From positions 2,980,750-3,039,789 of the forward strand of contig NC_068991.1 in the NCBI RefSeq assembly GCF_001194135.2: a stretch of DNA of 59,040 nucleotides, written 5' to 3'. The stretch is from Octopus bimaculoides. Lineage: Eukaryota. The notes below the pieces were generated by a model. It was not told where the DNA came from and ran no database searches. It saw nothing but the letters and a program-made list of their open reading frames with translations. This document shows positions 8,896 to 58,945 of this stretch, in pieces. A program made the position numbers and the translations under genes. The first letter of the stretch is position 1. Every line of letters begins with the position of its first letter.

Positions 8896-9405
8896 GGCAA
8901 TCAGCTGACAACATTATTAGTAGACTGGACAAAACACTCAGCAGCATTTCATCCATTTTTACATTCTGAGATTAAATTTCCAGTGAGGTCAACTTTGTCT
9001 TTCATCCTTTTCTGTGGTTGATTAGATAAGTACCAGTCATGTACTGGGGTTGATGTAATCAACTTCCCGCCACCCTCAAAAACTGCTGGCCCTGTGCAAA
9101 AATTTGAAACCATTATTACTATTACTATTATTATTATTATTATTATTATTAGTATCATTATTATCTTTTCTTGTAAGGCAACAAGCTGGCCGAATCATTA
9201 GCACATCAGGCGTAATGCTTAGCACTATTTCATCTACAGCTACGTTCTGAATTCAAATTCTACCGAGGTCAACTTTGCCTTTCATCCTTTCGCAGTTGAT
9301 AAATCATATACCAGTAAAACACTGGGGTCGATGTAATCGACTCGTCCCCCACCCCCATTCCCCCCAAAATTTCAGGTCTTGTGACTTTAGTAGACAGGAT
9401 TATTA
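8894..9405 (+). mobile_element. Two tandem SINE family B copies (8894-9110, 9174-9405) separated by (ATT)n
   Basis: aaggc..gctggc.gaatc.ttagc...ttctgagttcaaatt...gtcaactttgcctttcatcc...gatgtaatcgac...gccttgtg. Confidence 0.85.
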
Positions 9406-12667: not shown

Positions 12668-13410
12668 NNNNNNNNNNNNNNNNNNNNNNNNNNNNNNNNN
12701 NNNNNNNNNNNNNNNNNNNNNNNNNNNNNNNNNNNNNNNNNNNNNNNNNNNNNNNNNNNNNNNNNNNNNNNNNNNNNNNNNNNNNNNNNNNNNNNNNNNN
12801 NNNNNNNNNNNNNNNNNNNNNNNNNNNNNNNNNNNNNNNNNNNNNNNNNNNNNNNNNNNNNNNNNNNNNNNNNNNNNNNNNNNNNNNNNNNNNNNNNNNN
12901 NNNNNNNNNNNNNNNNNNNNNNNNNNNNNNNNNNNNNNNNNNNNNNNNNNNNNNNNNNNNNNNNNNNNNNNNNNNNNNNNNNNNNNNNNNNNNNNNNNNN
13001 NNNNNNNNNNNNNNNNNNNNNNNNNNNNNNNNNNNNNNNNNNNNNNNNNNNNNNNNNNNNNNNNNNNNNNNNNNNNNNNNNNNNNNNNNNNNNNNNNNNN
13101 NNNNNNNNNNNNNNNNNNNNNNNNNNNNNNNNNNNNNNNNNNNNNNNNNNNNNNNNNNNNNNNNNNNNNNNNNNNNNNNNNNNNNNNNNNNNNNNNNNNN
13201 NNNNNNNNNNNNNNNNNNNNNNNNNNNNNNNNNNNNNNNNNNNNNNNNNNNNNNNNNNNNNNNNNNNNNNNNNNNNNNNNNNNNNNNNNNNNNNNNNNNN
13301 NNNNNNNNNNNNNNNNNNNNNNNNNNNNNNNNNNNNNNNNNNNNNNNNNNNNNNNNNNNNNNNNNNNNNNNNNNNNNNNNNNNNNNNNNNNNNNNNNNNN
13401 NNNNNNNNNN
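12668..13410. other. Assembly gap (largest). Other N-runs at about 3388, 6644, 16247-16908, 25382, 26574, 32523, 44358, 48401 and 50376-50725
   Basis: Runs of n. Confidence 1.
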
Positions 13411-13442
<32 letters not shown>

Positions 13443-16194: not shown

Positions 16195-16908
16195 ATATAT
16201 ATATATATATTTACATGTATGATGATGATGATGTATATTCATATATNNNNNNNNNNNNNNNNNNNNNNNNNNNNNNNNNNNNNNNNNNNNNNNNNNNNNN
16301 NNNNNNNNNNNNNNNNNNNNNNNNNNNNNNNNNNNNNNNNNNNNNNNNNNNNNNNNNNNNNNNNNNNNNNNNNNNNNNNNNNNNNNNNNNNNNNNNNNNN
16401 NNNNNNNNNNNNNNNNNNNNNNNNNNNNNNNNNNNNNNNNNNNNNNNNNNNNNNNNNNNNNNNNNNNNNNNNNNNNNNNNNNNNNNNNNNNNNNNNNNNN
16501 NNNNNNNNNNNNNNNNNNNNNNNNNNNNNNNNNNNNNNNNNNNNNNNNNNNNNNNNNNNNNNNNNNNNNNNNNNNNNNNNNNNNNNNNNNNNNNNNNNNN
16601 NNNNNNNNNNNNNNNNNNNNNNNNNNNNNNNNNNNNNNNNNNNNNNNNNNNNNNNNNNNNNNNNNNNNNNNNNNNNNNNNNNNNNNNNNNNNNNNNNNNN
16701 NNNNNNNNNNNNNNNNNNNNNNNNNNNNNNNNNNNNNNNNNNNNNNNNNNNNNNNNNNNNNNNNNNNNNNNNNNNNNNNNNNNNNNNNNNNNNNNNNNNN
16801 NNNNNNNNNNNNNNNNNNNNNNNNNNNNNNNNNNNNNNNNNNNNNNNNNNNNNNNNNNNNNNNNNNNNNNNNNNNNNNNNNNNNNNNNNNNNNNNNNNNN
16901 NNNNNNNC

Positions 16909-31678: not shown

Positions 31679-32204
31679 TATTGTGGAATAGTGATGTTTG
31701 TAGATTTGTAGTGGTACTCAGGTGGTATAGTATGGGTAATGCTACTGTTGTGGTACTTACGGTTTTGTGATGTTGTTGTTGTTGGTGTTACAGTACTGCT
31801 AATGTGGTCGTACTAAGAGAATTAGTTTTGTGGTTGCTGTTGCTGTAGTATGTGTCGTAGCTGTAGTGTAGCTAGGGAGGGACCTAGGAGGCGGCCCGCC
31901 TCCGCCCTGAACGACGCTTTTATTTTTGGGTCTCCTGTATAATTTTGTACAAGCAGCGCAGGGCCGAGGGTGGAGAGGCAAACTCTAGAGCTGCCCCGGA
32001 CGGCACACACTCTGGCTGCGCCACTTTGTGGTGGCGCTTGTTGCTGTTGTGAGAGTAGTAATAGCAGCAGCAGCAGCAGTAGTAGTAGTGAGGAGCTCGT
32101 CTAGTATTGCTTGTTGCTGATTTTGGCAATGGATGTTGGTGGTGGTGGAGGTGATGGCGATGTTGGTGTGGTCGGCGGCGGCGGTGGAAGTGGTGACGTT
32201 GTTG

Positions 32205-32236
<32 letters not shown>

Positions 32237-32779
32237 AGATGAAGAAAAAAGTTAAATGCTTAAGTTGTCTGATCATGCTGAAACTTCTATAACGTCTGCG
32301 CTGGGGTACGGCACTACCCACTTCCCCACTCCATACACATGCATCTATAGACACACACACACACACACACATACCTACACATTTTCTACCCAACAATACT
32401 TTTAAACCACCTTCTTCGCCCTCCTCCAATTCACTCCACCGTTACCGCATTGATTTATCGATCACATGATATATACGATTCGATCTCTCCTGTTACAATC
32501 TACACCTCTTTCCCCCCCCCCCNNNNNNNNNNNNNNNNNNNNNNNNNNNNNNNNNNNNCCCCCGTCACTCTCCCTCACAGGCAAACACATACGTATAATA
32601 CATACATAGATACATACATACATATATACATATACATACACGGACACTTATATATGAACATACACATACACATGCAAGCACACATACACACACTCTCTCC
32701 TTCTCAACCTCCCCCATCACCTTTACTTTGACAACAAAATACTCCTTTTCAAAATGTTAAAGCAGACGTGTTTGGTTAG

Positions 32780-32794
32780 AGGTTATCTCTCTCT

Positions 32795-32831
<37 letters not shown>

Positions 32832-33150
32832 ACTCTCCCTTCCTCTCATCCTTTCGCTCCCCTTCTCGCTCTCGTCTTCTTCACACTATATCTCTCTTTC
32901 TCTTCCACACAAATCTATCTCTTCTCTCTCTCTTTCGTTTTCCTTCCCTTCACTTCCATTCTGTCTTTTCTATTTTCTTTTCCCTCCAGCTCTCTCTCTC
33001 TCTCTTTCTCTTCCTCTCTATTTCTTATCTTTAACTCTCCTACCCTCTTTTTCTCTCCTCATCCCTCTCTCTCTCCACCCCTCTTCTTTCTCATCTCTCT
33101 CTCTTCCCGACCCCCTCTCTCTCTCTCCTCTCCCCTACCCTTCACACAAT
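32780..33150. repeat. CT-rich low-complexity tract (representative of many TA, CA, CT, AAT and GAT simple repeats in the window)
   Basis: Directly visible. Confidence 0.9.
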
Positions 33151-33460
33151 AACTCAACGACTTTCTCCAATACATTTCTCTCCCGTCTAACTATTTGACT
33201 TCATTCCAGTCCAATTTTAGTTTCCAATACTATATTGATCTCTTAACTACAGAACACCTTCTCCGAAATTCCTTCTGTTTGGGGAACAACTTGACATCAT
33301 TATCATCATCATCACCATTATTATTATTATTATTATTATCATTTACGGTTTGATGGATGCGACAGTTGTTTCCTCTTCTTACACCTGATAAGAGTTAGGT
33401 GCAGTTTTGGAAAACATGCGCAGCTAAATTTTCAAGGTTAACAAATTCTTCGTAGGAATT

Positions 33461-33712
33461 CGGTAGCGTAGCTGGGGTGGTAGTGGTGGTGGTGGTGGTG
33501 GCGGCGGCGGTGGTGGTGGAGAAGTGCGGAGGGGCGTCATAACCCCCCCCTCGTCCCACCTCACCCAGGTGACAGATATATGGGGGGAGGGAGGGGTGTC
33601 ACTTATGAATCTGCGGTTTAAGCCTGTATAATACATATGGCTTGTTGGGGCCCGGGGTCCCCGCAAACTCAAAGGGCTGCCCCGGACTGCACACACTCTA
33701 GCATTGCCAATG
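33461..33712. mobile_element. Putative MITE with degenerate CANTGGCGTAGCTAG TIRs; related copies at 31861-32026 and 36966-37082
   Basis: A 36-37 bp subterminal core is nearly identical at 31978-32013 and 33663-33699; TIR-like ends. Confidence 0.45.
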
Positions 33713-34244
33713 TAAGTATCTTTTATCCTTTACTTATTTCAGTCATTAGAACACTCGTCGTCATAACCGACGGAGTGCCAGTTCTGTCTACAAGGTGTTG
33801 GTTGGGACGGAGTGCAATGTTTCGTCGCAGTCCTTTTAACTAACATGACGATGTCAGGACATCAGAAGCGATTGTATATCATTTTGGTTGTAACCATTAC
33901 AAAAGCGATGATTCTGGCACGTGTTTTCCCTTCTTTCTTTGCTTTTTAATGTCCATTCAGTGAAAAACCTCAATCATTCCGGTTCCTTTCCGTTTTGTTT
34001 TTCTCTTTTTCTGTGTGTGTTTTTTCTCTCCTTTTTCGACTTGTTTCCTCACACAATAGACATTCGGTGTTGATACGTCAATTATTAAAACACTGATCTC
34101 GGTGTTTTTGTTTGTTATGGAAAAATGAAGTCTGACTTATTGATTGATGTTTGGCACACACACACACACACATACATGTGTGTGTGTGTGTGCTTTCTGT
34201 TGTTTGTGAGCAAGTGTCATAGAATATTTTTATCTCTGAGGCGA

Positions 34245-34288
34245 AAGAGAGGTTCAGTAAGTAGACGGAAACTGCGTGGAAGCCCATC

Positions 34289-34331
<43 letters not shown>

Positions 34332-34540
34332 CATGTGTGTCTTTATGTTTGCGCTGTTTGTCTCTTACCACCGCTCGACAACGGGTGCTGGTTTGTTTAC
34401 ATCCCTGTAACTTAGCGTTTCAGCAAGAGAGACCGATAGAAATACACTGGTGGGGAGGGGGTCTATTTGTTCGATTATACCCTTCAAGGCAGTGCACCAG
34501 CATGGCCGCAGTCCAATCGCTGAGACAAGAGAATAAAAGA
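34245..34540 (+). mobile_element. SINE family A, 5'-truncated
   Basis: gtagacggaaactg...(GT)n...cagcatggccgcagtc. Confidence 0.8.
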
Positions 34541-34674
34541 AAGATTACAACAAAGCACATCCATCTTGTGTTGTTTTTGGAGACATCCGTATCGTCGAGA
34601 ACATTCCATTTGGCCATTTTGCCAACAACAACACTCACGCATACATTTATCTTTCATCTTTTACTTGAATCAGG

Positions 34675-34855
34675 CATTGGACTGCGGCCATGCTGGGGCA
34701 CCACCTTGAAGAACTTTTGTCGCACGGATCGAGCCAAACGCTTATTTTTTTAAAGCCTGGTACCTATCCTATCGGTCTCTTTGGCCGAACCGCTTGGTTA
34801 TGAGGAGGTAAACACATCAACACTGTCAAGCAGTGGTAGGAGATGAACACATCCA
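34675..34855 (-). mobile_element. SINE family A, 3' part
   Basis: ggactgcggccatgctggggcaccaccttgaag... is the reverse complement of the family 3' body. Confidence 0.75.
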
Positions 34856-36249
34856 CAAAGGCACACGCACACACACACTCAGCCGACCTGAGGTTAAACA
34901 ACAAGAATGGTTTCCTCTCTAGTCGAACTTGTATTCTGTCGTTTCAGTTATTGAGGGGTACCTCCTTAAAGGTTTTAGTCGATTAAATATATTGCTAGGC
35001 TTTGCGGTTAGGGTGTTGTGCTTACGGCTGCGAGATCGTAGGACGGTATTTTGTGTTCTTGAAGAAAACGCTTCATTTCACATTGCCCCAGTCCACTCAG
35101 CTGTAAATCTGTCACCCTGCGACGGACTGGCGTCTTGTTCAATGAAAACAATTGTGATTTCGGTTACTTACACGCCATAGAAACTGGATAACTGGCCCCG
35201 GGGCCCAAGACGGTGATATTTGCCAAGGAGAATCTGCTTCAATAAATCACATAAACCAGAAATGCGTCCTCTCCCATTCTGCTGGTTTTAAATTTCAACA
35301 AAATTTCAATTAATTGATCTTATTGGAATTATCTCCCTTCTTTGATGTTTCTTAGAGGGAGTCTTCGTCTGCTAAGTGTATAGATAATCGAATTTAATCG
35401 ATTTTTTTCAACTGACTCCATTACATATGTGAGACGCTACTGTATTTAGTTTGCGGGTCGCTACCCTCGAGTATTTTTTTCTCAACTTTGTTATTTTGTG
35501 TAATATTTTTATCAGAGTCTCAGAACTATGGTAATTGGCAGCGAAGAGTTGTAAGGGAGAGAAGGAAGGAGAGAGAGAGAGAGTGAGTTTATTAATGTCG
35601 CCACCATGATTGGGGAGGAAAAGTGAAGAGAAGAGGGGGAGCAAAAAGGGGGTGGGCGTGTATGAAAGTGAGTTAGTGATCAAAGAATATCTATTATTGG
35701 TAGAATTATGGTATCGATGGCGGCGAGAGGCAGAGAGAGAGAGAGAAAGATAGGAGGTAAGAGAGAGTGGTACGAAAGTGTAGTTGAGGTGGGAGAAAAG
35801 GAAGGGGGAGGTTTCTGTTATTGACATGGCAAGTGTTAGTGAGGTGGTGGTGGTGGGGGGGTTAAACCAGAGAAAGATTGGAACTGATAGGCGGGGGGAG
35901 GGGGACCCACTGAGAGGGTGTCTGTTCACTGATGAAATTCGAGTCTTAGAATATAGCAGAGTTCCATTGATTAGTTTTCCATCAGCTCCACTCGTTCCTT
36001 CTTTCCAATACAGAATGGTTTTTGCCTGCTAGATAGGCACCAATATCTGTGGATATTGATCAAATAGACATAGTTTATTGATCTCTGTCGGATAAGCACA
36101 GCCTATAAAAGATATCAACTGAATAGACACAGATTGTATATATATATATATTGTTCCTCTTCAACCGTTAGTTAGTGGCTGGTGGATGGTGACTGGTTGC
36201 ATGATGGACATGAATTATAAATCTCAGTTGGATGCACATGGTTTGTTTT

Positions 36250-41395: not shown

Positions 41396-41578
41396 TTAAT
41401 TGATGAAAAAACCTAATAAACAAGTCATACATATTCTCTTTCTCTCTCTCTCCATTGAGTTCATCAAATCAATTTTTTTTCATGCATGTGAAATATTTTT
41501 GTATGTTTGCAATATATGTCCATCATAATGTGTATTTGATAAATATATTATGTATGTATGTATGTACGTATGTATGTA

Positions 41579-41609
<31 letters not shown>

Positions 41610-41644
41610 ATAAAGAATGTGTCTGTCAGGAATAACTAATTCAC

Positions 41645-41662
41645 TTTTCTTCTCTTTTACAG
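41645..41662 (+). promoter_or_regulatory. Splice acceptor of an intron upstream of the ASL-like CDS
   Basis: ttttcttctcttttacag|GTTG, preceded by a (TATG)/(TG) microsatellite. This makes the ORF-track start at 41617 likely intronic. Confidence 0.7.
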
Positions 41663-41874
41663 GTTGCCTGACCAACTGGAAGAAATTTGACCATCTTCAT
41701 CCTGTTATTGTAATAGTTTCATTTATTTCATTTTTGTTTTATTTTTCCATTTTATATTGTTTTTTTTTTAATGACCATTGTTTTGTCTTCCAACTCATTG
41801 TCTTGGAAACAAGCCATCACATCTCACTGATCCCCTCCGTATTGTGTTCGTTGTTCAATTCTACAAAAACCATC

Positions 41875-43524
41875 ATGCAGAGCCTTTACCGTTCTTTCAT
41901 GAAATCATTCATTATGATCATCTTCACTGTGACTCTGCTGCTGTTGATTTTCGTTCTGGGTCCAATGAGTGCTTTCTATAGCAAGACAAGAGTCTCAACA
42001 CAGACGTCGCCCGTCAAGAAGACTCCAAAATCAAATCTCACCAACAGCACCCGCTTCAGACATAATTTTACCAAAAGCTTCCATGAAATATTGCATTTGA
42101 CTCTGAAAGATGCCATCACTCAACCGTCTGTGGTAAATAGTTCCAAGTTCCATGGAACGCATCTCATAACTTCTCCAAAAGACAGTCTACAGAACTATGG
42201 CATTGCTCAAACTGTTGATTACAATCTCTTCAAAGAGGACATCGAATGCAGTAAGGCGTATGCCAAAAGCCTGACAAGGGTCGGTCTCCTCACGAGAAAA
42301 GAGTGTCATAACATTTTGGATGGTCTTGAAATGATTGGAATGGAGTGGGAAAATGGGACGTTCGACTTGAAGCCAGATGATAAAGATGTCCATGCTGCCA
42401 ATGAACGGCGCCTGGCAGAGTTGATTGGTTCAGCAGCAAATAAGTTAAATGCTGGCTGGGATCGCAATGACCAGTTGGCGACAAGTCTTAGACTGTGGCA
42501 AAAAAATGCCATCAGTGTTCATAAGAATGATCTTATTGAGCTGTTGGGTGTGATCACTGAGCGTGCAGAGAAGGAGCTTGGTGTTCTTATGGCTGGCTAC
42601 ACAGTAATGCAGCAAGCTCGACCAATCAGATGGAGTCACTGGTTGCTTAGCTTTGGTTGGAAAATCAAAAGAGATATTGAAAGACTTATGGATCTACTTT
42701 CACGAGTTGACTTGCTGCCACTTGGAAGTGGGGCTCTAGCAGGAAACCCTTTTGGGGTTGACAGAATGTTTTTGGCCAAAGAGCTTGGGTTTGCTGACAT
42801 CATAGAAAACAGCATTGATGCTGTCAACGACCAAGACATTATCTTTGAATACGTTGCCTGGGCGTCGATTATGGCAGCTCACTTCCACAATTTGGCTAAT
42901 GACCTTATTTTATACAGTACGAAAGACTTCGGGTTTGTTGAACTTTCCCATCCATTACACAATGTCCAAAATAATGCCAGTAGCTTTTCAAATGAGAATG
43001 CTCGCAGCTTGGAAGAAATCCGTGGTAAAACCAATCACATCTTTGGGGAATACACTGACATGTTGAGTGTCTTGAAGGAATTCTCAAACCTACACAACAA
43101 TGATTTTTTATCAAATGCCAAAGGAATGTTTGACATTTACAAGACAATTGTGAATGCTTTACCAATAACCAGAGCAATCCTTTCTTCTTTGAAAATAAAC
43201 CCAGACAAAATGGAAGCTTCCCTCAGTGAAGATATGTTATTGCCAGACTTGGAATATTACATGGTACGAAAGGGCTTACCTGCTGACAAGGCGCACAGCC
43301 TGGTTGGAATGTGTGTTAGATTGTCACAGAAAAAGGGGGTCACTTTTTCGAAACTCTCTTTGGCTGAGTTGAGATCTGTCAGTCCTGTTTTTGACCTCGA
43401 TGTAAAATCTGTATGGAATTATAACAACAGTGTAGAGCAATACACACTTCCAGGAGGGACGAGTCATGCCAGTGTACAGCTTCAAATAGATCAGTTGAAG
43501 AAATGGATGTCGTTCCAAAGATAA
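41875..43524 (+). CDS. ASL: Argininosuccinate lyase-like protein (fumarase/ASL superfamily), intronless CDS, predicted catalytically inactive, with N-terminal signal/anchor
   Basis: The ORF aligns colinearly with animal ASL (SKAYAKSL, DVHAANERRLAELIG, RNDQ, IRWSHWLLS, LPLGSGALAGNPFGVDR, DLILYSTKDFGFVELS, YMVRKGLP, SVEQYTLPGGTS). The start is placed at aaccatcATG 41875, the first in-frame ATG after a strong acceptor at 41662. It is an ASL-like paralog, not necessarily the ortholog. Confidence 0.92.
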   Translation: MQSLYRSFMKSFIMIIFTVTLLLLIFVLGPMSAFYSKTRVSTQTSPVKKTPKSNLTNSTRFRHNFTKSFHEILHLTLKDAITQPSVVNSSKFHGTHLITSPKDSLQNYGIAQTVDYNLFKEDIECSKAYAKSLTRVGLLTRKECHNILDGLEMIGMEWENGTFDLKPDDKDVHAANERRLAELIGSAANKLNAGWDRNDQLATSLRLWQKNAISVHKNDLIELLGVITERAEKELGVLMAGYTVMQQARPIRWSHWLLSFGWKIKRDIERLMDLLSRVDLLPLGSGALAGNPFGVDRMFLAKELGFADIIENSIDAVNDQDIIFEYVAWASIMAAHFHNLANDLILYSTKDFGFVELSHPLHNVQNNASSFSNENARSLEEIRGKTNHIFGEYTDMLSVLKEFSNLHNNDFLSNAKGMFDIYKTIVNALPITRAILSSLKINPDKMEASLSEDMLLPDLEYYMVRKGLPADKAHSLVGMCVRLSQKKGVTFSKLSLAELRSVSPVFDLDVKSVWNYNNSVEQYTLPGGTSHASVQLQIDQLKKWMSFQR

Positions 43525-43757
43525 TCGTTCTGCAGACCAATAACCAATCATTGGAATGCTCACACCTACCAACACCTTTCACTATTTGTTAGAAAAACTT
43601 TATAAGAATTTCTGACAAATTAATTTATTTATTGTGTTCACTCGTTATAGACTGGGTTTTCTTGTTCGTGTTTTTTTGAGAGTAACTTGTGTATGTGTGT
43701 GTGTGCGCGTGTGTTTATGTGTGCTTCTGTATATATGTATTTGAATGTCTGTGTGTG

Positions 43758-43795
<38 letters not shown>

Positions 43796-44166
43796 CACGT
43801 ATATACATACATATATGTATATTTATGTATGTAGCTATGTATACATAATTATGCATTTATGTGTGTGTGTATGCATATATATATATATATACACACTCAC
43901 ATATGCATATATTTATAATACCCACCCACCCACACTCACACACAATAGCTATATAACTAAACAAATAGTTTTCAGCAACCCTCACCCTGACTCTCACTGG
44001 AATTGAACCCACCTTTACGTGATTCCATTCTCTTCTAACATTTTACTGCTTCTATTATTTTGTTTTATAACCTCAGTAATTATTGTTGTTCTTGTTGTTG
44101 ATGTTGTTCTCTGTTGACTTCTTTATGGTGTTGCTTCCAGTTTTTTTCTCCCCACCCACCTCCTTT

Positions 44167-44234: not shown

Positions 44235-44275
<41 letters not shown>

Positions 44276-44304
44276 GTATGTGTGTATATATATATATATA
44301 TATA

Positions 44305-44357
<53 letters not shown>

Positions 44358-46829
44358 NNNNNNNNNNNNNNNNNNNNNNNNNNNNNNNNNNNNNNNNNNN
44401 NNNNNNNNNNNNNNNNNNNNNNNNNNNNNNNNNNNNNNNNNNNNNNNNNNNNNNNNNNNNNNNNNNNNNNNNNNNNNNNNNNNNNNNNNNNNNNNNNNNN
44501 NNNNNNNNNNNNNNNNNNNNNNNNNNNNNNNNNNNNNNNNNNNNNNNNNNNATATATATGTATATATACATATACATATATATGTGTATATATATATATA
44601 TATGTATATGTATATATATGTGTGTGTGTGTATATATATATCTGTATATATATATATGTATGTATATATGTGTGTATGTATGTGTGTGTGTGTGTGTGTG
44701 TATCAAAACAAGAGATTGGAAGAAATATTTGGTATTATTCACCATTACATATGTTTTATTTACTAATAGGAGTTACGAAATTATACATATAAGAAAAACA
44801 TGTAAGTTATCTCCTAGTTGGATTATAACCATATATATATATATATGTATATATATATACACCTGTTTTTCACTGTCTCTTTTGGTTTATTTTTTGTTTT
44901 TCTCCTTCCAAAGAATTCACCAAAACTGTAAGATATTAACCTTTGCATTTTTCGCAACTGTTTTCTGCTTCCAAAACCACCAAAACACTCCCAACAGCAT
45001 CGAACACATTTAAACATAAGCCGAAGACAAAGTTGAAAAAGATGGAATGGTCATCGCTGGAATGCCTTTTGATCATAAAGTCAGCCCCAACCATCTTACC
45101 CAGAGCTAAGCAACAACACACTTGAGTTATTTTTTTGCGCATGTTCTGTGTGTGTGTGTGTTTGTGTGAGTGTTTGTGTAAACCAGAAAGATACACAGCA
45201 AAGCTGACTTTGCAGGGTTCCAATTCAAAACATCAAGCTTCATAAATTCTGCTACAAGACACAAATCTAGAATATTTCTGCTGATAAAATACATAAGCAT
45301 TGAATTATTAAACGCCATTTTATTGGCTGTCCTCATCTGCCACATCTCTGGCCTTCTACCTAAATTATAATTCCTTATTTTACAAAAAAAGACATTATAT
45401 TCTCAACAAAGCCTGACCCCTTTTTTGTTTTTTCTTTATCTCTACTGTGGTTATTTCATGATATCTATTTTGCTAATAACTTGAAACCCCATTATTAAAA
45501 AAGAGCCCTAAACAACAGACTATCATGTTTTCTTGTCATATAAATTCAAAGCCTAGAATCTGTCTAAAAGAATTGTTCTTTCCACCTGGTTGTAATGTTG
45601 ATTGGAAATCTATTAGCAAACCACGTTTGAAACGGTTACAAATCCCAGTTGAAATTGCTTTGCATGAATATCTCATTGTTATTGTTGTTGTTGTTGTTAT
45701 TGCTGGTGTCATTATTGTTGTTGTTGTTGTTGTTGTCTGATATAAAGCTGTTTCTCCGATATGAAATTAATATTCATATCGTTAGAATGATTTCCCTTTA
45801 AAAAGAAAACAACAAAAAAATAACTTTAAAACTTAAATCTGCATTTATTTTGTTCCAACATTGCATGCTAGCAAAACACTGATCAAATTTTACCGTGCTC
45901 CCACTGCCTCTGTCTACAGGGATGAATTACAACCTCATCTAAGAATGTGGGGTAGAGGGATTGAGAAGAAGGTTTTCAGTAGATTTATTTTCCATCGACA
46001 TAATGCTAAATGGTTACACAATTGAGACAGATAATCTTGCTTCAACACAATCCTTTGTGAAATTCAACAACCTGGACCATTGTTCTTTTTTGTGTTTGTT
46101 TTTTTATTAATTTGGATTTATCTAGTTTTTGTATCTTTCAAATTATCAGCTTGTCAAGAGGTGAATAATTCCCTAAGCATTGCTCTCTGAATCTGCAAAA
46201 CCATCAAAGCCCCTCTACCCCTGTACAAAGGCAGCAGACAACTTCGGAGAGGTTTAATTGCGTTGCTAATAACCTGGTTTGTCAAAAAGGCCTGAAATTC
46301 ACATTGTCTTCCTAATTTTTGTTGCTGCTTCAAAGCATTTTCCACTTTTGTGTCACTCTTCAGAAAACCATGAATGTTACAGCTTCCTGTTTCTGTTCTT
46401 TCCAAAGAATTTTTTTCAACTTTCATGTCTTTGTATTCTTGGCTGTTGAAAAAATGCCTGATTGATGTGTCTTGTTATTTTTGTCTCCTCTTAAAAAAAC
46501 TTTTGACCGTTTGAGCCAACAAAGAAATCAGAGCTATGAGAAATATTCCAAATGTTCCTCAAAATCACACTGTACCATCTTAAAAAAATAAAGGACACAC
46601 TTTGCATAATGTAACCCTAGATACACCATGTCTGGAAGAATAAAAAAAATATAAAGACTGCACGATCATGTCTTGAGAGCCTTTCAATCATAGGCTAGCT
46701 GCGTATGGACTGGCTAGCAACAACAACTGCAACACCAACAACTACAAGGAAGAACATGCTGGAATATGTAATCTTAAATACACAGCTCTTTGCTGAGAAC
46801 CAAGGCCAGGATAGCCATTAATAATGGAT

Positions 46830-50054: not shown

Positions 50055-50225
50055 CATTTCTATATTTAAGAGATGAGGAATTAAGTACATTATTTACATT
50101 TGACGGATATTTGTCCTCATCTTTGTTGTTAACACAACGTTTTGGCTGATATACCCTCCAGCCTTCATCAGGTGTCTTGGGGAAATTTCGAACCTGGGTT
50201 CTCATTCCTAGGGCATTTTTCTAAT
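50055..50225 (-). mobile_element. SINE family C, 3' part; its head appears at 50951-50979, beyond the LINE
   Basis: Reverse complement of 51100-51230. Confidence 0.8.
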
Positions 50226-50227
50226 GT

Positions 50228-50952
50228 GAATACCCATCAGAGTGTAAGTATCTTGAGAGAAAAGCTGAACATTAGAAACATCAGTTGTGGTGTGCAAGAG
50301 AGACGATTGCGCTGGTATGGACATGTGGTGAGAATGGATGAGGATAGCTGCGTGAAAAAGTGCCACACCCTAACANNNNNNNNNNNNNNNNNNNNNNNNN
50401 NNNNNNNNNNNNNNNNNNNNNNNNNNNNNNNNNNNNNNNNNNNNNNNNNNNNNNNNNNNNNNNNNNNNNNNNNNNNNNNNNNNNNNNNNNNNNNNNNNNN
50501 NNNNNNNNNNNNNNNNNNNNNNNNNNNNNNNNNNNNNNNNNNNNNNNNNNNNNNNNNNNNNNNNNNNNNNNNNNNNNNNNNNNNNNNNNNNNNNNNNNNN
50601 NNNNNNNNNNNNNNNNNNNNNNNNNNNNNNNNNNNNNNNNNNNNNNNNNNNNNNNNNNNNNNNNNNNNNNNNNNNNNNNNNNNNNNNNNNNNNNNNNNNN
50701 NNNNNNNNNNNNNNNNNNNNNNNNNGGCACATAAAAGACACCATTTCGAGCGTGGCCGTTTTCGTGCGGGTGACACGTAAAAGCACCCACTACACTCTCT
50801 GAGTGGTTGGCGTTAGGAAGGGCATCCAGCTGTAGAAACTCTGCCAAATTAGATTGGAGCCTGGTGTTGCCATCCGATTTCACCAGTCCTCAGTCAAATC
50901 GTCCAACCCATGCTAGCATGGAAAGCGGACGTTAAACGATGATGATGATGAT
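50228..50952 (+). mobile_element. 3' fragment of the same RTE-type LINE family, spanning an N-gap
   Basis: ERRLRWYGHVVRMDEDSCVKKCHTL before the gap; 3'UTR ggcgttaggaagggcatccagc...gttaaacgatgatgatg after it. Confidence 0.85.
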
Positions 50953-56854: not shown

Positions 56855-58945
56855 CCTCATCATCATTTAACGTCTGCTTTCCATGCTGGCATGGGTTGGA
56901 TGGTTTGACTGGAACTGGTTCCAGTCTGATTTGGCATGGTTTCTATGGCTGGATGTCCTTCCTAATGACAACCACTCTGAGAGTGTAGTGGGTGCCTTTT
57001 ATCTGTCATCAGCACCGGTGCTTTTACGAGTCACTGGCAACAACTACAATTTCACTTGGTTTGACGAGTCTTCCCAAGCACAGCAAATTGCCAAAGTTCA
57101 TGATCACATACCATTCCCTCCGTGAGACCTGACATTTGAAGATCATGTTTCATCGCTTTGTCTCATGTCTTCCTGGGTCTACCTCTACCACAGTTTCCCT
57201 CCACAGTTAGAAATTGGCTCTTCTTCACACAGCTTTCCTTGTCCATACGTATCACATGACCATACCAGTGCATTCATCTCTCTTGCACACCACATCTGAT
57301 GCCTCTTATGCCCAATTTTTCTCTCAAGACACTTACACTCTGTCTTACATGCACATCCTGTGGAGTATACTATATTTCTGTCTTTCGAGCATTTGCATGT
57401 CCTCTGCAGTCACAGCTCATGTTTCACTGCCATGTAGCATGGTTGTTTGCACACAGGCATCATACAATCTGCCTTTCAGTCTGAGGGGAAGACCCTATTT
57501 GTTGTCAACAAAGGTAGGAACTCTCTCAACTTTGCTCAGCCTATTCTAGCAGCTATGCTCTCAGAGCATCCCCCTCCACTGCTGATTTGGTCACCTGGGT
57601 AACGACTGCTATCAACTACTTCTAGGTATTGCCTTGGCATTTCATGGAATCTGTTTTCTGTATATTTCTAGTGTTTATTGTACCTATGCATCTGTCACAC
57701 ACAAAGACTATCTTCCCTGTTAACCTTCCTTTGATATTACTGCACATCTTATGTATCCATAGCTTGCACCAGGTACACCTTATGGGGTCTCTACCTATGC
57801 TTTTTCTACATGTCAAGCAGGGCCATCTACCCTGAAGGGATTTGTGATTTGACTGCTTTCCTACTAAGACTTTGGTCTTTGCTAAATTACCTCTAAGGCC
57901 TTTTGATTCTAGACCTTGCTTCCCCTCCTGAAATTTTTGTCTCCAGTTCTGGTAGTGATTCAGCTATAAGAACAGTCATCAGCATAAAGGAGCTCCCAGG
58001 GGCAACCCAACTTAAAATTCCTCTATTATTGCCTGAAGGACTATGATGAACAAAAGGGGGTTGAGGACTGACCCATGATGAACTGAATTCATTACAATTC
58101 TTGTTGCCAACCCTCACCTTATGAACAGCATCCCTGCACATGGCTTGTACAGCTCTCACCAGCCACTCCTCTATCCCTAGTTTCCACAGTGACCGCCAGA
58201 TAAAGGAGCAGGTGACTCTGTCGAAGGCTTTCTCCAAGTCAACAAAAGCCAAGTACAGGGGTTTATCTTTGGCTATGTATTTCTCTTGCAGCTGCCTTAC
58301 CAGAAATATAGCGTCAGTGGTGCCTCTCCCTGGCACAAAACTAAACTGCATCTCATCTAGACTAACTCTCTTCCTAATTAGTTGAGCTAAGACCCTCTCC
58401 TTAACTTTCATCACCTGATCCAACAATTTGATACCTCTGTTATTATTTCTATCTAAATCATCACCTTTACCTTTGTAGCAGTTGACTATGGTGCTGCTAC
58501 ACCAGTCATTGGGCATGATTCCTTCGTGTACAATCTGATTAACTATATGGTATCAAGCTACAGTCTATACGGATAGCTGGTCTTTCTCTTGGACCCACTT
58601 TAGGCAAACTCTCCTTCTGCCATGAGTTCTCTACATTTAGCAGCCTTTTGTAGTGGCACTTCCAAGACTCTTTCTTTGCAGTCACCAGCTGCAACTGAAC
58701 CATCATCCGTGTGAATGCACTTCTTTCCAACAACATCATAATTTTACTTGGCACACTCTCTTGCAAACCGAAACACTTCAAGCTGCTGGCCCTCATGCTG
58801 CAGAACATTGGCAAACTTCTTCCTTTCTGCTTCCCCTGTGGCTGAGTATACCTGTTCCTAGCTTACCTTCTTGCTACTATCACTCTTCCAGTCCCACTTC
58901 TTTGCTCTAATAGCCCTATCAACTACACCGTTCCGCCACCATCTC
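56855..58945 (-). mobile_element. Degenerate, 5'-truncated RTE-type LINE (RT, Cys-rich segment, C-terminus, 3'UTR, (GAT)n tail)
   Basis: Frameshifted peptides WWRNGVV; YKGKGD..RGIKLLDQVMKV..QFSFVPGRGTTDAIFLVRQLQEKY..LAFVDLEKAFDRV (57893-58516); IRCTWCKLWIHKMCS..FVCDRC; and RLRWYGHV-like C-terminus. The 3'UTR ends in catcatcat on plus at about 56857-56866. Confidence 0.92.

What the first reader, a model, noticed from the sequence alone, without database searches (positions are those of the whole stretch)
41875..42135. ASL homolog with a novel signal/anchor and glycosylated stem: a cytosolic enzyme fold routed to the secretory pathway
Seen: about 87 residues precede the point where ungapped ASL similarity starts (SKFHG aligned to GKLWG). 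They comprise a short basic N-terminus, a 17-residue hydrophobic helix (FIMIIFTVTLLLLIFVL, 41908-41958), a possible GPMSA|F cleavage site, and a Ser/Thr/Lys stem with sequons NLT, NST, NFT and NSS. Three more sequons (NGT, NAS, NNS) lie in the ASL domain. Known: ASL is a cytosolic homotetramer without a signal sequence. Inference: a type II membrane or secreted protein displaying an ASL tetramer in the lumen or outside the cell. I know of no described example.
Basis: partly seen in the sequence, partly recalled or inferred. Interest (0 to 1): 0.85.

Follow-up and report, generated by a model that had tools for sequence, protein, structure and literature searches.

The report
Membrane-anchored, enzyme-dead ASL retrogene in octopus
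An intronless octopus copy of the arginine-making enzyme argininosuccinate lyase has a conserved N-terminal membrane anchor and sugar-site stalk shared with cuttlefish, and in octopuses it has lost its catalytic residues yet stays under strong selection, so it probably has a new, undescribed job.

Summary
Window 41875-43524 (+) is one uninterrupted 549-codon ORF in Octopus bimaculoides. Residues 1-88 are a basic tail, a 17-residue hydrophobic helix, GPMSA and a sequon-rich stalk. Residues 89-549 are a full animal-type ASL fold.

The leader is translated. It is 35/35 identical between Octopus and Argonauta, with 16 synonymous and 0 non-synonymous changes. It is 77% identical to cuttlefish. Spliced cuttlefish mRNAs show this ATG as the first one, with an in-frame stop at -9.

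The coding region is intronless in three genomes, whereas the canonical ASL has at least 16 exons on another chromosome. This points to an old retrogene.

It keeps only 102 of 167 near-invariant ASL positions. The catalytic His, the GSSxMPxKxN loop and the substrate-binding residues are gone. Cuttlefish keep 156 of 167. Octopod dN/dS is still about 0.03.

Lumenal routing is favoured but unproven. The evidence is positive N-flank charges, two invariant stalk sequons, and loss of the universal FNASI sequon. A cytosol-facing tether and a cleaved signal peptide remain open. I found no literature on this protein.

The parts
41875..43524 (+). Complete single-exon coding sequence (549 codons plus TAA) of the anchored ASL-like protein (P0001; O. 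bimaculoides CM046611.1).
   Evidence: ORF. Pfam Lyase_1 plus ASL_C2. PDB ASL/delta-crystallin hits at E about 1e-120. Record identity. Octopus-Argonauta nucleotide conservation spans 41871-43524, almost exactly ATG to stop.
41875..41907 (+). Residues 1-11, MQSLYRSFMKS: short basic N-terminal tail. R6 and K10 are invariant, and there are no acidic residues.
   Evidence: net +2 in octopods, +3 in Sepia.
41908..41958 (+). Residues 12-28, FIMIIFTVTLLLLIFVL: 17-residue hydrophobic segment, a candidate signal anchor.
   Evidence: KD19 mean 2.79 and summed Hessa scale -4.2. AF2 helix 2-33 with pLDDT 76-93. 0 non-synonymous versus 16 synonymous changes over codons 1-35 against Argonauta.
41959..41973 (+). 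Residues 29-33, GPMSA: invariant helix-breaking motif. A33|F34 is the only position compatible with the (-3,-1) rule for signal-peptidase cleavage.
   Evidence: Invariant in all orthologues. Cleavage itself was not testable here.
41974..42138 (+). Residues 34-88: Ser/Thr/Lys-rich stalk that evolves fast and is predicted to be disordered.
   Evidence: pLDDT below 50 for residues 33-112. dN/dS 0.215 against 0.029 for the domain. 27% identity to Sepia.
42034..42042 (+). Sequon N54-L-T. N and T are invariant in Octopus, Argonauta and Sepia.
42064..42072 (+). Sequon N64-F-T. N and T are invariant in Octopus, Argonauta and Sepia.
42043..42051 (+). Sequon N57-S-T, octopod-specific.
42136..42144 (+). 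Sequon N88-S-S, specific to the genus Octopus.
42139..42210 (+). Residues 89-112: degenerate N-terminal arm of the ASL fold. WGGRF has become FHGTH and FNASI has become YGIAQ. It is only 16/24 identical to Argonauta.
42454..42474 (+). Remnant of conserved region C1: GWDRNDQ in place of GRSRNDQ (duck delta-2 R113 to W, S114 to D).
42595..42624 (+). Remnant of conserved region C2: GYTVMQQARP in place of GYTHLQRAQP. The catalytic His (delta-2 H162) is replaced by Val.
42946..43014 (+). Remnant of the C3 'SS loop': SHPLHNVQNNASSFSNENARSLE in place of SDAYSTGSSLMPQKKNxDSLE. K289, the Pro and the Ser pair context are lost. There is an indel relative to Argonauta, and identity to Argonauta is only 11/26.
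   Evidence: AF2 pLDDT below 50 for residues 361-371.
43075..43125 (+). KEFSNLHNNDFLSNAKG in place of KGxPSTYNKDLQEDKEA. Substrate-binding residues Y323, K325, Q328 and K331 (delta-2 numbering) are replaced.
41640..41662 (+). Candidate 3' splice site (pyrimidine tract plus CAG) for a 5'-UTR intron. Unverified in Octopus. It would remove the fortuitous in-frame upstream ATG at 41617.
   Evidence: Sequence. The analogous, RNA-verified acceptor lies 37 nt upstream of the ATG in Sepia. The upstream ORF extension is not conserved: in-frame stops at -168 in another Octopus species and at -39 in Argonauta.

Best explanation
The gene is an ancient, coleoid-cephalopod retrocopy of the cytosolic enzyme argininosuccinate lyase. 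It gained a new N-terminal module: a short basic tail, a 17-residue very hydrophobic helix, a GPMSA motif and a roughly 55-residue disordered stalk.

Most likely mechanism (inferred):
- SRP (the signal recognition particle, which routes nascent proteins to the ER) recognises the helix, and the protein inserts co-translationally into the ER membrane with the N-terminus in the cytosol. This is a type II signal anchor.
- The stalk is N-glycosylated at N54 and N64.
- The ASL-fold domain, presumably still a tetramer, sits in the lumen of the early secretory pathway (ER or Golgi; the helix is short) or on the cell surface.

Order of events (inferred from sequence states):
- The anchor was acquired while the enzyme was still active. 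Cuttlefish orthologues keep every catalytic residue.
- In the octopod lineage, including this window, the catalytic machinery was dismantled while the fold, the anchor and most of the surface stayed under strong purifying selection.
- The octopus protein therefore works as a non-catalytic binding, scaffold or structural module, not as a lyase.

Shown: the architecture, its conservation, the start codon (RNA evidence in Sepia), the intronless structure, the loss of catalytic residues, and the selection.
Inferred: ER targeting, orientation, glycosylation, retention of the anchor, tetramer formation, and the non-catalytic role.
For: Fold:
- Lyase_1 plus ASL_C2. E about 1e-120 to human ASL and duck delta-2 crystallin. 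AF2 core pLDDT above 90.

Retrogene:
- The CDS is a single exon in Octopus, Argonauta and Sepia.
- The canonical O. bimaculoides ASL has at least 16 coding exons on a different chromosome.

The leader is translated and conserved:
- Octopus-Argonauta DNA conservation begins 4 nt before the ATG and ends at the stop.
- Codons 1-35 show 16 synonymous and 0 non-synonymous changes.
- 27/35 residues are identical to Sepia, against 27% in the stalk and 56% in the domain.
- At least 15 spliced Sepia RNA contigs share one 5'-UTR junction, with an in-frame TAA at -9. The 179-nt UTR examined in full has no upstream ATG.

Hydrophobic segment:
- KD19 is 2.8-3.0. It is unique among the retrieved ASL homologues.
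- The leader profile hits only this family among 1.84e9 representative proteins.

Orientation and lumenal exposure:
- The N-flank is +2/+3 with invariant R6 and K10. The 15-residue C-flank is -1 in Sepia.
- N54xT and N64xT are invariant in an otherwise 27%-identical stalk.
- Stalk sequon density exceeds shuffles (P = 0.005 to 0.04).
- The N160 sequon is shared by all anchored copies but by only 8 of 96 canonical ASLs.
- The FNASI sequon, present in 94 of 96 canonical ASLs next to the active site, is removed in every anchored copy. That includes the otherwise canonical Sepia one, which has FGDSI.
- The stalk is disordered in the AF2 model.

Pseudoenzyme:
- Octopods keep 100-102 of 167 positions that are at least 95% conserved in 96 canonical ASLs. 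Sepia keeps 156-157; the canonical minimum is 157.
- H162 is Val, R113/S114 are W/D, and the SS-loop, K289, Y323, K325, Q328 and K331 are lost.
- The two mobile catalytic elements are the only relaxed parts (67% and 42% Octopus-Argonauta identity, against 94-95% elsewhere).

Still functional:
- dN/dS is 0.022-0.038 in octopods.
- The octopod plus Sepia clade has 100% bootstrap support, with a roughly fourfold longer octopod branch.
Against: - No topology, signal-peptide or glycosylation predictor was available, and there are no experimental data.
- In octopods the charge difference across the helix is about 0 (+2 versus +2 within 15 residues). By established knowledge, very hydrophobic N-terminal segments can insert in the opposite orientation.
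- ASL substrates are cytosolic, and no lumenal use for a still-active (Sepia) ASL is known.
- No new cysteine pairs were acquired: 2-3 Cys, at sites where canonical cephalopod ASLs also tend to have Cys.
- The sequon statistics are modest (P about 0.005-0.05) and partly post hoc.
- The N160 sequon also occurs in 8 of 96 cytosolic ASLs.
- There is no RNA proof of the Octopus transcript structure. Contigs L004 and L005 are collinear with the genome.
- Tetramer formation was not tested.
Confidence: 0.47

Rival explanations
1. Cytosol-facing membrane tether. The hydrophobic helix inserts with the N-terminus out and the C-terminus in (like a cytochrome P450 anchor), or into another organelle's outer surface. 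The ASL domain stays in the cytosol, pinned to a membrane. In cuttlefish it would channel arginine production locally. In octopods it would keep only the known non-catalytic scaffolding role of ASL in arginine and nitric-oxide metabolism.
For: - ASL substrates and partners are cytosolic (established knowledge).
- Mammalian ASL has a documented structural, non-catalytic role in a nitric-oxide synthase complex (PMC10296609). This would explain why an enzyme-dead copy stays constrained.
- The helix is extremely hydrophobic, which by established knowledge favours translocation of the N-terminus.
- The octopod charge difference is about 0.
- No disulfide-type cysteines were gained.
Against: - The N-flank carries invariant R6 and K10, and Sepia has +3 versus -1. 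This predicts the N-terminus in the cytosol.
- Two invariant N-x-T sequons in a fast-evolving stalk, and removal of the universal FNASI sequon, would be coincidences.
- There is no basic cluster directly after the helix, as is typical of P450 or mitochondrial outer-membrane anchors. The first K/R comes 9 residues after the helix, and Sepia has none within 15 residues.
Confidence: 0.23
2. Cleavable signal peptide. Residues 1-33 are removed by signal peptidase after A33, and a soluble, glycosylated ASL-fold tetramer is secreted, for example into a gland product, matrix or body fluid.
For: - The layout resembles a signal peptide: a basic n-region, a hydrophobic core, then an invariant helix-breaking G-P followed by M-S-A, with small residues at -1.
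- The stalk sequons lie downstream of this site.
Against: - The hydrophobic core (17 residues) and the total length (33) are long for a signal peptide, and Met at -3 is unusual (established knowledge).
- The segment is the most conserved part of the protein: 35/35 identical between Octopus and Argonauta at saturated dS, and 77% identical to Sepia. Signal peptides normally evolve fast. This argues that the segment stays in the mature protein.
Confidence: 0.2
3. Dead retropseudogene or annotation artefact. The ORF is a decaying processed copy of ASL, and the N-terminal extension is untranslated 5' sequence that happens to be open.
For: - The copy is intronless.
- Catalytic residues are lost.
- It is flanked by microsatellites and retroelement fragments.
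Against: - The ORF is intact in at least 4 octopod and at least 2 Sepia species.
- dN/dS is 0.02-0.04, with zero non-synonymous changes in the leader.
- Conservation is confined exactly to ATG-stop.
- Spliced mRNAs appear in many Sepia RNA-seq assemblies.
Confidence: 0.02

Closest known systems
Canonical metazoan argininosuccinate lyase (EC 4.3.2.1; fumarase/aspartase class II superfamily), e.g. human ASL (PDB 1AOS, 1K62) and O. bimaculoides ASL (P0012)
   Same: - Same three-domain, all-helical fold and the same Pfam architecture.
- 44-48% identity over residues 89-549.
- The cuttlefish orthologue keeps all catalytic motifs and 61% identity.
   Different: - An N-terminal hydrophobic anchor and stalk, absent from all other retrieved ASLs.
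- A single coding exon, against at least 16.
- In octopods, 65 of 167 near-invariant positions are lost, including the catalytic His and the SS-loop.
Delta-1 crystallin of birds and reptiles (enzymatically inactive ASL paralogue recruited as a lens structural protein; PDB 1I0A, 1U15)
   Same: An ASL duplicate that gave up catalysis but is kept by selection for a non-catalytic role. The PDB hits are equally strong.
   Different: - By established knowledge, delta-1 is cytosolic, arose by tandem duplication with introns, and keeps nearly all active-site residues. Its inactivity lies mainly in the N-terminal region and the loop.
- The octopod protein is membrane-anchored or secretory, retrogene-derived, and has a thoroughly rebuilt cleft.
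- Lens expression was not tested here.
Type II Golgi/ER-resident enzymes (glycosyltransferases, sulfotransferases), and cytosolic enzyme families with one re-routed member, e.g. the Golgi PAP phosphatase gPAPP/IMPAD1 and Golgi glutaminyl cyclase isoQC (comparison from my own knowledge)
   Same: The same layout: a short basic cytoplasmic tail, a signal anchor of about 17-20 residues, a disordered Ser/Thr-rich glycosylated stem, then a globular catalytic-type domain.
   Different: - There is no sequence relationship. The leader matches nothing else among 1.84e9 representative proteins.
- Localisation, glycosylation and activity are untested.
- No member of the ASL/fumarase superfamily is known to me in this class.
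Retrogenes that gain new targeting sequences (relocalised retrocopies)
   Same: An intronless copy on another chromosome, with a newly acquired 5'-UTR exon and intron and a new N-terminal coding extension.
   Different: - It is very old: shared by Octopoda and Sepiida, so the poly(A) tail and target-site duplications are no longer recognisable.
- The parent lineage is only weakly indicated.

Membership tests
Argininosuccinate lyase (enzyme, EC 4.3.2.1) | Lyase_1 plus ASL_C2 domain architecture and full-length similarity to solved ASL structures | tested here: met
   Pfam E 6e-57 and 7.5e-15. PDB 1K7W and 1AOS at E about 1e-120 over residues 89-548.
Argininosuccinate lyase (enzyme, EC 4.3.2.1) | C3 signature loop GSSxMPxKxN with the catalytic Ser and K289 (duck delta-2 numbering) | tested here: not met
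   The window protein has NNASSFSNENAR, with no Lys or Pro. The loop differs by an indel from Argonauta and is 42% identical to it. The feature is met in the Sepia orthologue (GSSLMPQKKNPD).
Argininosuccinate lyase (enzyme, EC 4.3.2.1) | C1 (SRNDQ with the preceding R) and C2 (GYTHLQ, catalytic His) motifs, and the substrate-binding Y323/K325/Q328/K331 | tested here: not met
   GWDRNDQ, GYTVMQQ and HNNDFLSNA in octopods. Only 102 of 167 near-invariant positions are kept, against a canonical minimum of 157.
Argininosuccinate lyase (enzyme, EC 4.3.2.1) | Cleavage of argininosuccinate to arginine plus fumarate; homotetramer | not testable with these tools
   Needs recombinant protein, a 240-nm fumarate assay, and SEC-MALS (size-exclusion chromatography with light scattering).
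Argininosuccinate lyase (enzyme, EC 4.3.2.1) | Soluble cytosolic protein without a targeting sequence | tested here: not met
   N-terminal segment with KD19 of 2.79. All other retrieved ASLs score 2.03 or less, none at the N-terminus.
Type II single-pass membrane glycoprotein | N-terminal hydrophobic signal-anchor segment of about 17-25 residues | tested here: met
   Residues 12-28; KD19 2.79; Hessa sum -4.2; AF2 helix 2-33.
Type II single-pass membrane glycoprotein | Positive-inside charge asymmetry (N-flank more positive than C-flank) | tested here: inconclusive
   Sepia +3 versus -1 (met). Octopus +2 versus +2 and Argonauta +2 versus +1 within 15 residues.
Type II single-pass membrane glycoprotein | Anchor not cleaved by signal peptidase | not testable with these tools
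   SignalP and DeepTMHMM were not available. Extreme conservation of residues 1-35 argues for retention. The invariant GPMSA is compatible with cleavage.
Type II single-pass membrane glycoprotein | Lumenal or extracellular stalk and domain carrying N-glycans | tested here: inconclusive
   Sequons are present, enriched and conserved: N54 and N64 are invariant, and N160 is shared. The FNASI sequon is removed. Actual glycosylation is not testable here.
Processed retrogene | Intronless coding region versus a multi-exon parent, at a different locus | tested here: met
   One exon in three genomes, against at least 16 exons in the canonical gene. Chromosomes CM046611.1 versus CM046625.1.
Processed retrogene | Identifiable parent lineage; poly(A) remnant; target-site duplications | tested here: inconclusive
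   The NJ tree leaves the clade's position unresolved because of the long branch. Sepia shares 7 of 51 octopod-canonical-specific residues, against 0-1 for most control clades. Poly(A) and target-site duplications were not searched for, since they are unlikely to survive at this age.
Delta-crystallin-type recruited ASL | Catalytically inactive ASL paralogue under purifying selection | tested here: met
   (sequence-level inference of inactivity).
Delta-crystallin-type recruited ASL | Abundant soluble lens protein; sauropsid tandem duplicate | tested here: not met
   The protein is from a cephalopod, is retrogene-derived and carries a membrane anchor. Tissue expression is not testable here.

The most novel reading that the evidence does not exclude
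Coleoid cephalopods have a lineage-specific, roughly 300-million-year-old membrane-anchored, lumenal or extracellular glycoprotein built from the ASL tetramer fold. It is the first secretory-pathway member of the fumarase/aspartase superfamily. It is still a lyase in cuttlefish, acting on argininosuccinate or a related guanidino-succinyl compound outside the cytosol. In octopods it has been converted into a non-catalytic receptor, scaffold or structural protein.
Probability: 0.4. Interest if true: 0.75.

Novelty: new variant of a known kind. Interest (0 to 1): 0.6.

Why it matters
This would be a clean natural example of three steps of protein innovation in one gene, each still visible in a living lineage.

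1. Retroposition of a housekeeping urea-cycle and arginine enzyme.
2. Gain of a de novo targeting and anchor module that moves a cytosolic tetrameric enzyme to a membrane, probably into the secretory pathway.
3. Later conversion to a pseudoenzyme that stays under strong constraint.

The cuttlefish (active-looking) and octopus (enzyme-dead) orthologues form a ready-made comparative pair. They can be used to ask what a relocated ASL does and what the fold is used for once catalysis is gone. This parallels delta-crystallin recruitment and the non-catalytic scaffolding role of mammalian ASL.

Public annotations hide the feature. The octopus and Argonauta entries are labelled only 'argininosuccinate lyase-like', and the Sepia pharaonis entry is 'argH' and is truncated before the anchor.

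Tried and rejected
- Leader-only profile search in the 5.8e9-protein word-indexed database. It returned nothing, not even the query's own protein, so it is uninformative. It was replaced by the exhaustive HMMER search of representatives, which found only this family plus two weak low-complexity hits.
- Biopython BLOSUM bootstrap tree timed out. It was redone with a numpy Kimura-distance NJ tree. The clade is solid, but its placement among metazoan ASLs is unresolved. No maximum-likelihood program was available.
- Extended 635-codon ORF from the ATG at 41617: rejected. It runs through an intron-like acceptor, is not conserved, and has in-frame stops in the other Octopus species and in Argonauta.
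- Octopus RNA evidence: contigs L004 and L005 are collinear with the genome across the candidate intron and end in microsatellites. They are probably genomic, so they give no splice information.
- Conserved upstream block 33216-33342 as a candidate first exon: it is mostly (ATC/ATT)n repeat, so not convincing.
- Literature lead on a 'secreted ASL' in Colletotrichum: this is a horizontally transferred bacterial ASL, not a secreted one.
- SRA run numbers could not be linked to papers or tissues.
- Squid and Nautilus orthologues: none appeared. That means not found in this database, not that they are absent.
- Mitochondrial bipartite presequence and di-arginine ER-retention motif: considered and judged unlikely from the sequence. 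The n-region is 11 residues, the core is very hydrophobic, and there is no RR at positions 2-5.
Full report
**1. What is at the coordinates**

- Window 41875-43524 (+) is one uninterrupted ORF of 549 codons. It is by far the longest non-repeat ORF in the 59-kb window. The rest is microsatellites, assembly gaps and retroelement debris.
- The product is identical to a protein of Octopus bimaculoides assembly GCA_001194135.2, chromosome CM046611.1.
- Residues 114-360 and 458-521 match Pfam Lyase_1 and ASL_C2.
- Residues 89-548 align without large gaps to human ASL and duck delta-crystallins at E about 1e-120.
- The hydrophobic segment has a 19-residue Kyte-Doolittle mean of 2.79. The best window in the canonical octopus ASL scores 1.08, and the median of the per-protein maxima over all retrieved proteins is 1.22. 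No other ASL among those retrieved has such a segment.

**2. The extension is translated and old**

- Orthologues with the same leader exist in Octopus sinensis, O. vulgaris and a fourth Octopus species. They also exist in Argonauta hians (88% identity) and in cuttlefish (the Sepia/Acanthosepion cluster, 53% identity).
- The leader is the best-conserved part of the protein. Residues 1-35 are 35/35 identical between Octopus and Argonauta, with 16 synonymous and 0 non-synonymous differences. They are 27/35 identical between Octopus and Sepia, against 27% for the stalk and 56% for the ASL domain.
- DNA similarity between the Octopus and Argonauta loci starts 4 nt before the ATG and ends at the stop codon.
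- In Sepia, many independent RNA-seq assemblies share one splice junction. It joins a non-coding 5' exon to an acceptor 37 nt upstream of the ATG, and unspliced or genomic contigs show the TTTTTCAG acceptor. In the spliced contigs the in-frame codon at -9 is TAA, and the 179-nt 5'-UTR examined in full has no upstream ATG.
- Argonauta has an in-frame TGA at -39 and no upstream ATG within 400 nt.
- The 635-codon ORF from 41617 in this window is therefore accidental. It crosses an intron-like acceptor at 41640-41662 and is closed in the other species.
- I could not obtain RNA evidence for Octopus itself.

**3. Origin**

- The coding region is a single exon in Octopus, Argonauta and Sepia genomic DNA.
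- The canonical O. bimaculoides ASL (P0012) is split into at least 16 coding exons over about 14 kb on another chromosome.
- A canonical ASL is also expressed in the same Sepia run series.
- The anchored proteins form a clade with 100% bootstrap support. The octopod branch is about four times longer than the Sepia branch. The clade's position among animal ASLs is not resolved by my NJ tree.
- A weak excess of residues shared with canonical cephalopod ASL hints at a cephalopod parent.
- The simplest reading is one retroposition before the octopod-decapod split, followed by recruitment of a 5' exon and gain of the leader.
- A profile of the leader finds nothing but this family among 1.84 billion representative proteins. 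The leader was therefore not borrowed from a recognisable gene.
- No squid or Nautilus orthologue appeared in the protein searches. This means not found, not absent.

**4. The octopus protein is not an ASL enzyme**

- Against 96 canonical metazoan ASLs, 167 alignment columns are at least 95% identical. The Sepia anchored proteins keep 156-157 of them, where the canonical minimum is 157 and the median is 166. The octopod proteins keep only 100-102.
- Octopod losses, in duck delta-2 numbering taken from the alignment:
  - WGGRF and the FNAS motif of the N-terminal arm.
  - R113 and S114 (GRSRNDQ becomes GWDRNDQ).
  - The catalytic His162 (GYTHLQ becomes GYTVMQ).
  - The whole GSSLMPQKKN loop, including K289.
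  - Y323, K325, Q328 and K331.
- Sepia keeps all of these.
- The octopod gene is nevertheless under strong purifying selection: dN/dS is 0.022 between two Octopus species and 0.038 between Octopus and Argonauta.
- The only relaxed parts are the two mobile elements that close over the substrate in ASL. The N-arm is 16/24 identical and the SS-loop 11/26, with an indel, against 94-95% identity elsewhere.
- Membrane anchoring therefore came first, on a still-active enzyme. Catalysis was abandoned later in Octopoda, while the fold kept a selected function.

**5. Where does the domain face?**

No signal-peptide or topology predictor was available, so this section rests on indirect evidence.

For a lumenal or extracellular domain:
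- The N-flank is net positive with invariant R6 and K10. In Sepia the flanks are +3 versus -1.
- Two N-x-T sequons (N54, N64) are invariant across Octopus, Argonauta and Sepia in a stalk that is otherwise 27% identical. By my rough estimate, chance retention of two of the four sequons has a probability of about 0.03.
- Stalk sequon density exceeds composition-matched shuffles (P = 0.005, 0.018 and 0.042 in the three lineages).
- The stalk is predicted to be disordered, as in Golgi-enzyme stems.
- The N-A-S sequon of the FNASI motif is present in 94 of 96 cytosolic ASLs and lies next to the active site. It has been removed in every anchored copy. That includes Sepia, where only about 11 of the 167 invariant positions changed. 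This loss is expected if the site would otherwise be glycosylated.

Against:
- The octopod charge balance is neutral.
- By established knowledge, very hydrophobic N-terminal segments can insert with the N-terminus out.
- The substrates are cytosolic.
- No new cysteines were gained.

On cleavage:
- The invariant GPMSA motif is compatible with signal-peptidase cleavage after A33.
- The 17-residue core, the Met at -3 and the extreme conservation of the segment argue for a retained anchor.
- By established knowledge on transmembrane-domain length, the short helix fits ER or Golgi residence better than the plasma membrane.

**6. Verdict on mechanism**

| Reading | Probability |
|---|---|
| Type II signal-anchored glycoprotein with the ASL-fold domain in the secretory-pathway lumen or at the surface; enzyme-dead in octopods | about 0.45-0.5 |
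| Cytosol-facing tether, attractive because ASL has a known non-catalytic scaffolding role in nitric-oxide synthesis (PMC10296609) | about 0.23 |
| Cleaved signal peptide and secretion | about 0.2 |
| Dead pseudogene | effectively excluded |

The pseudoenzyme status of the octopus copy (about 0.85) and the retrogene origin (about 0.8) are much firmer than the topology.

**7. Comparison with what is known**

- By fold and ancestry it belongs to the ASL branch of the fumarase/aspartase superfamily. It fails the defining catalytic-motif tests, so it should not be filed as an ASL enzyme.
- Functionally it resembles delta-1 crystallin, an ASL duplicate kept for a non-catalytic role. It differs in origin, topology and the depth of active-site remodelling.
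- Architecturally it resembles type II Golgi enzymes and re-routed members of cytosolic enzyme families such as gPAPP/IMPAD1 and isoQC. That comparison is from my own knowledge and is an analogy only.
- Full-text searches for ASL with cephalopod, octopus, Sepia, transmembrane, signal peptide or secreted found no description of this protein.
- Databases label the octopus and Argonauta proteins 'argininosuccinate lyase-like'. The Sepia pharaonis entry is labelled 'argH' and is truncated before the anchor.

**8. Limits**

- Topology, cleavage, glycosylation, oligomeric state, activity and tissue of expression are all untested.
- Hessa-scale values and delta-2 residue roles come from memory of the literature.
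- The phylogeny is distance-based only.
- The sequon statistics are modest and partly post hoc.

Noticed in passing
window 57893-58516 (-) and 50142-50780 (+): The first ORF matches Pfam RVT_1 (E 3.8e-11), so it is a LINE-type reverse-transcriptase fragment. The second carries an 'RRLRWYGHVVRMDEDS' motif next to an assembly gap and has no Pfam hit; it is probably another retroelement tail.
   Followed up: partly
window ~3390, 12690-13440, 16250-16900, 44270-44560, 50370-50730; microsatellites at 41550-41612 and 43690-43800: Runs of N (assembly gaps) sit inside (TA)n, (TG)n and (TATG)n microsatellites. The ASL-like ORF is bracketed by such repeats, which is also where the Logan contigs L004 and L005 end.
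   Followed up: no
window 31920-36000; block 33216-33342: This is the only GC-richer stretch of the window (0.43-0.44). It contains a His/Gln-rich ORF on the minus strand with no Pfam hit. A short block is collinear with Argonauta about 8 kb upstream of the gene in both species, but most of it is (ATC/ATT)n repeat. It is a possible promoter or 5' exon, not demonstrated.
   Followed up: partly
window ~43261-43269 (codons M463/V464): The O. vulgaris isoform CAI9730668.1 (P0122, 631 aa) leaves the ORF at a donor-like ATG|GTACGA. It continues into a 13-residue tandem repeat, (IAVANSRHREGLQ)n. This looks like an annotation artefact or a minor splice form.
   Followed up: no
L002 9665-9954 (Argonauta, directly upstream of the ATG): A 42-bp tandem repeat of 6.9 copies at 96% identity abuts the start codon region. 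A second array with an 18-bp unit lies at 9001-9348.
   Followed up: no
P0012, P0019, P0014 (canonical cephalopod ASLs), N-terminal 25-60 residues: Canonical cephalopod ASLs carry their own acidic N-terminal extension with a conserved NLS-like KRPR motif, which other molluscs lack. MAFFT aligns it with the invariant 'KKxxRSN' of the anchored protein's stalk. This may be remnant homology that would tie the retrocopy to a cephalopod parent.
   Followed up: partly
P0125 (Acanthosepion pharaonis CAE1276449.1, 'argH', 472 aa): The public gene model starts at an internal Met (MEAVTQQ...), so it omits the anchor and most of the stalk that the transcripts and the genomic ORF encode.
   Followed up: yes
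window 41771-41830: A short out-of-frame upstream ORF starts at an ATG at -104 and ends before the main ATG. It lies in the candidate 5'-UTR of the Octopus gene. Argonauta has no upstream ATG within 400 nt, and the 179-nt Sepia 5'-UTR examined has none.
   Followed up: partly
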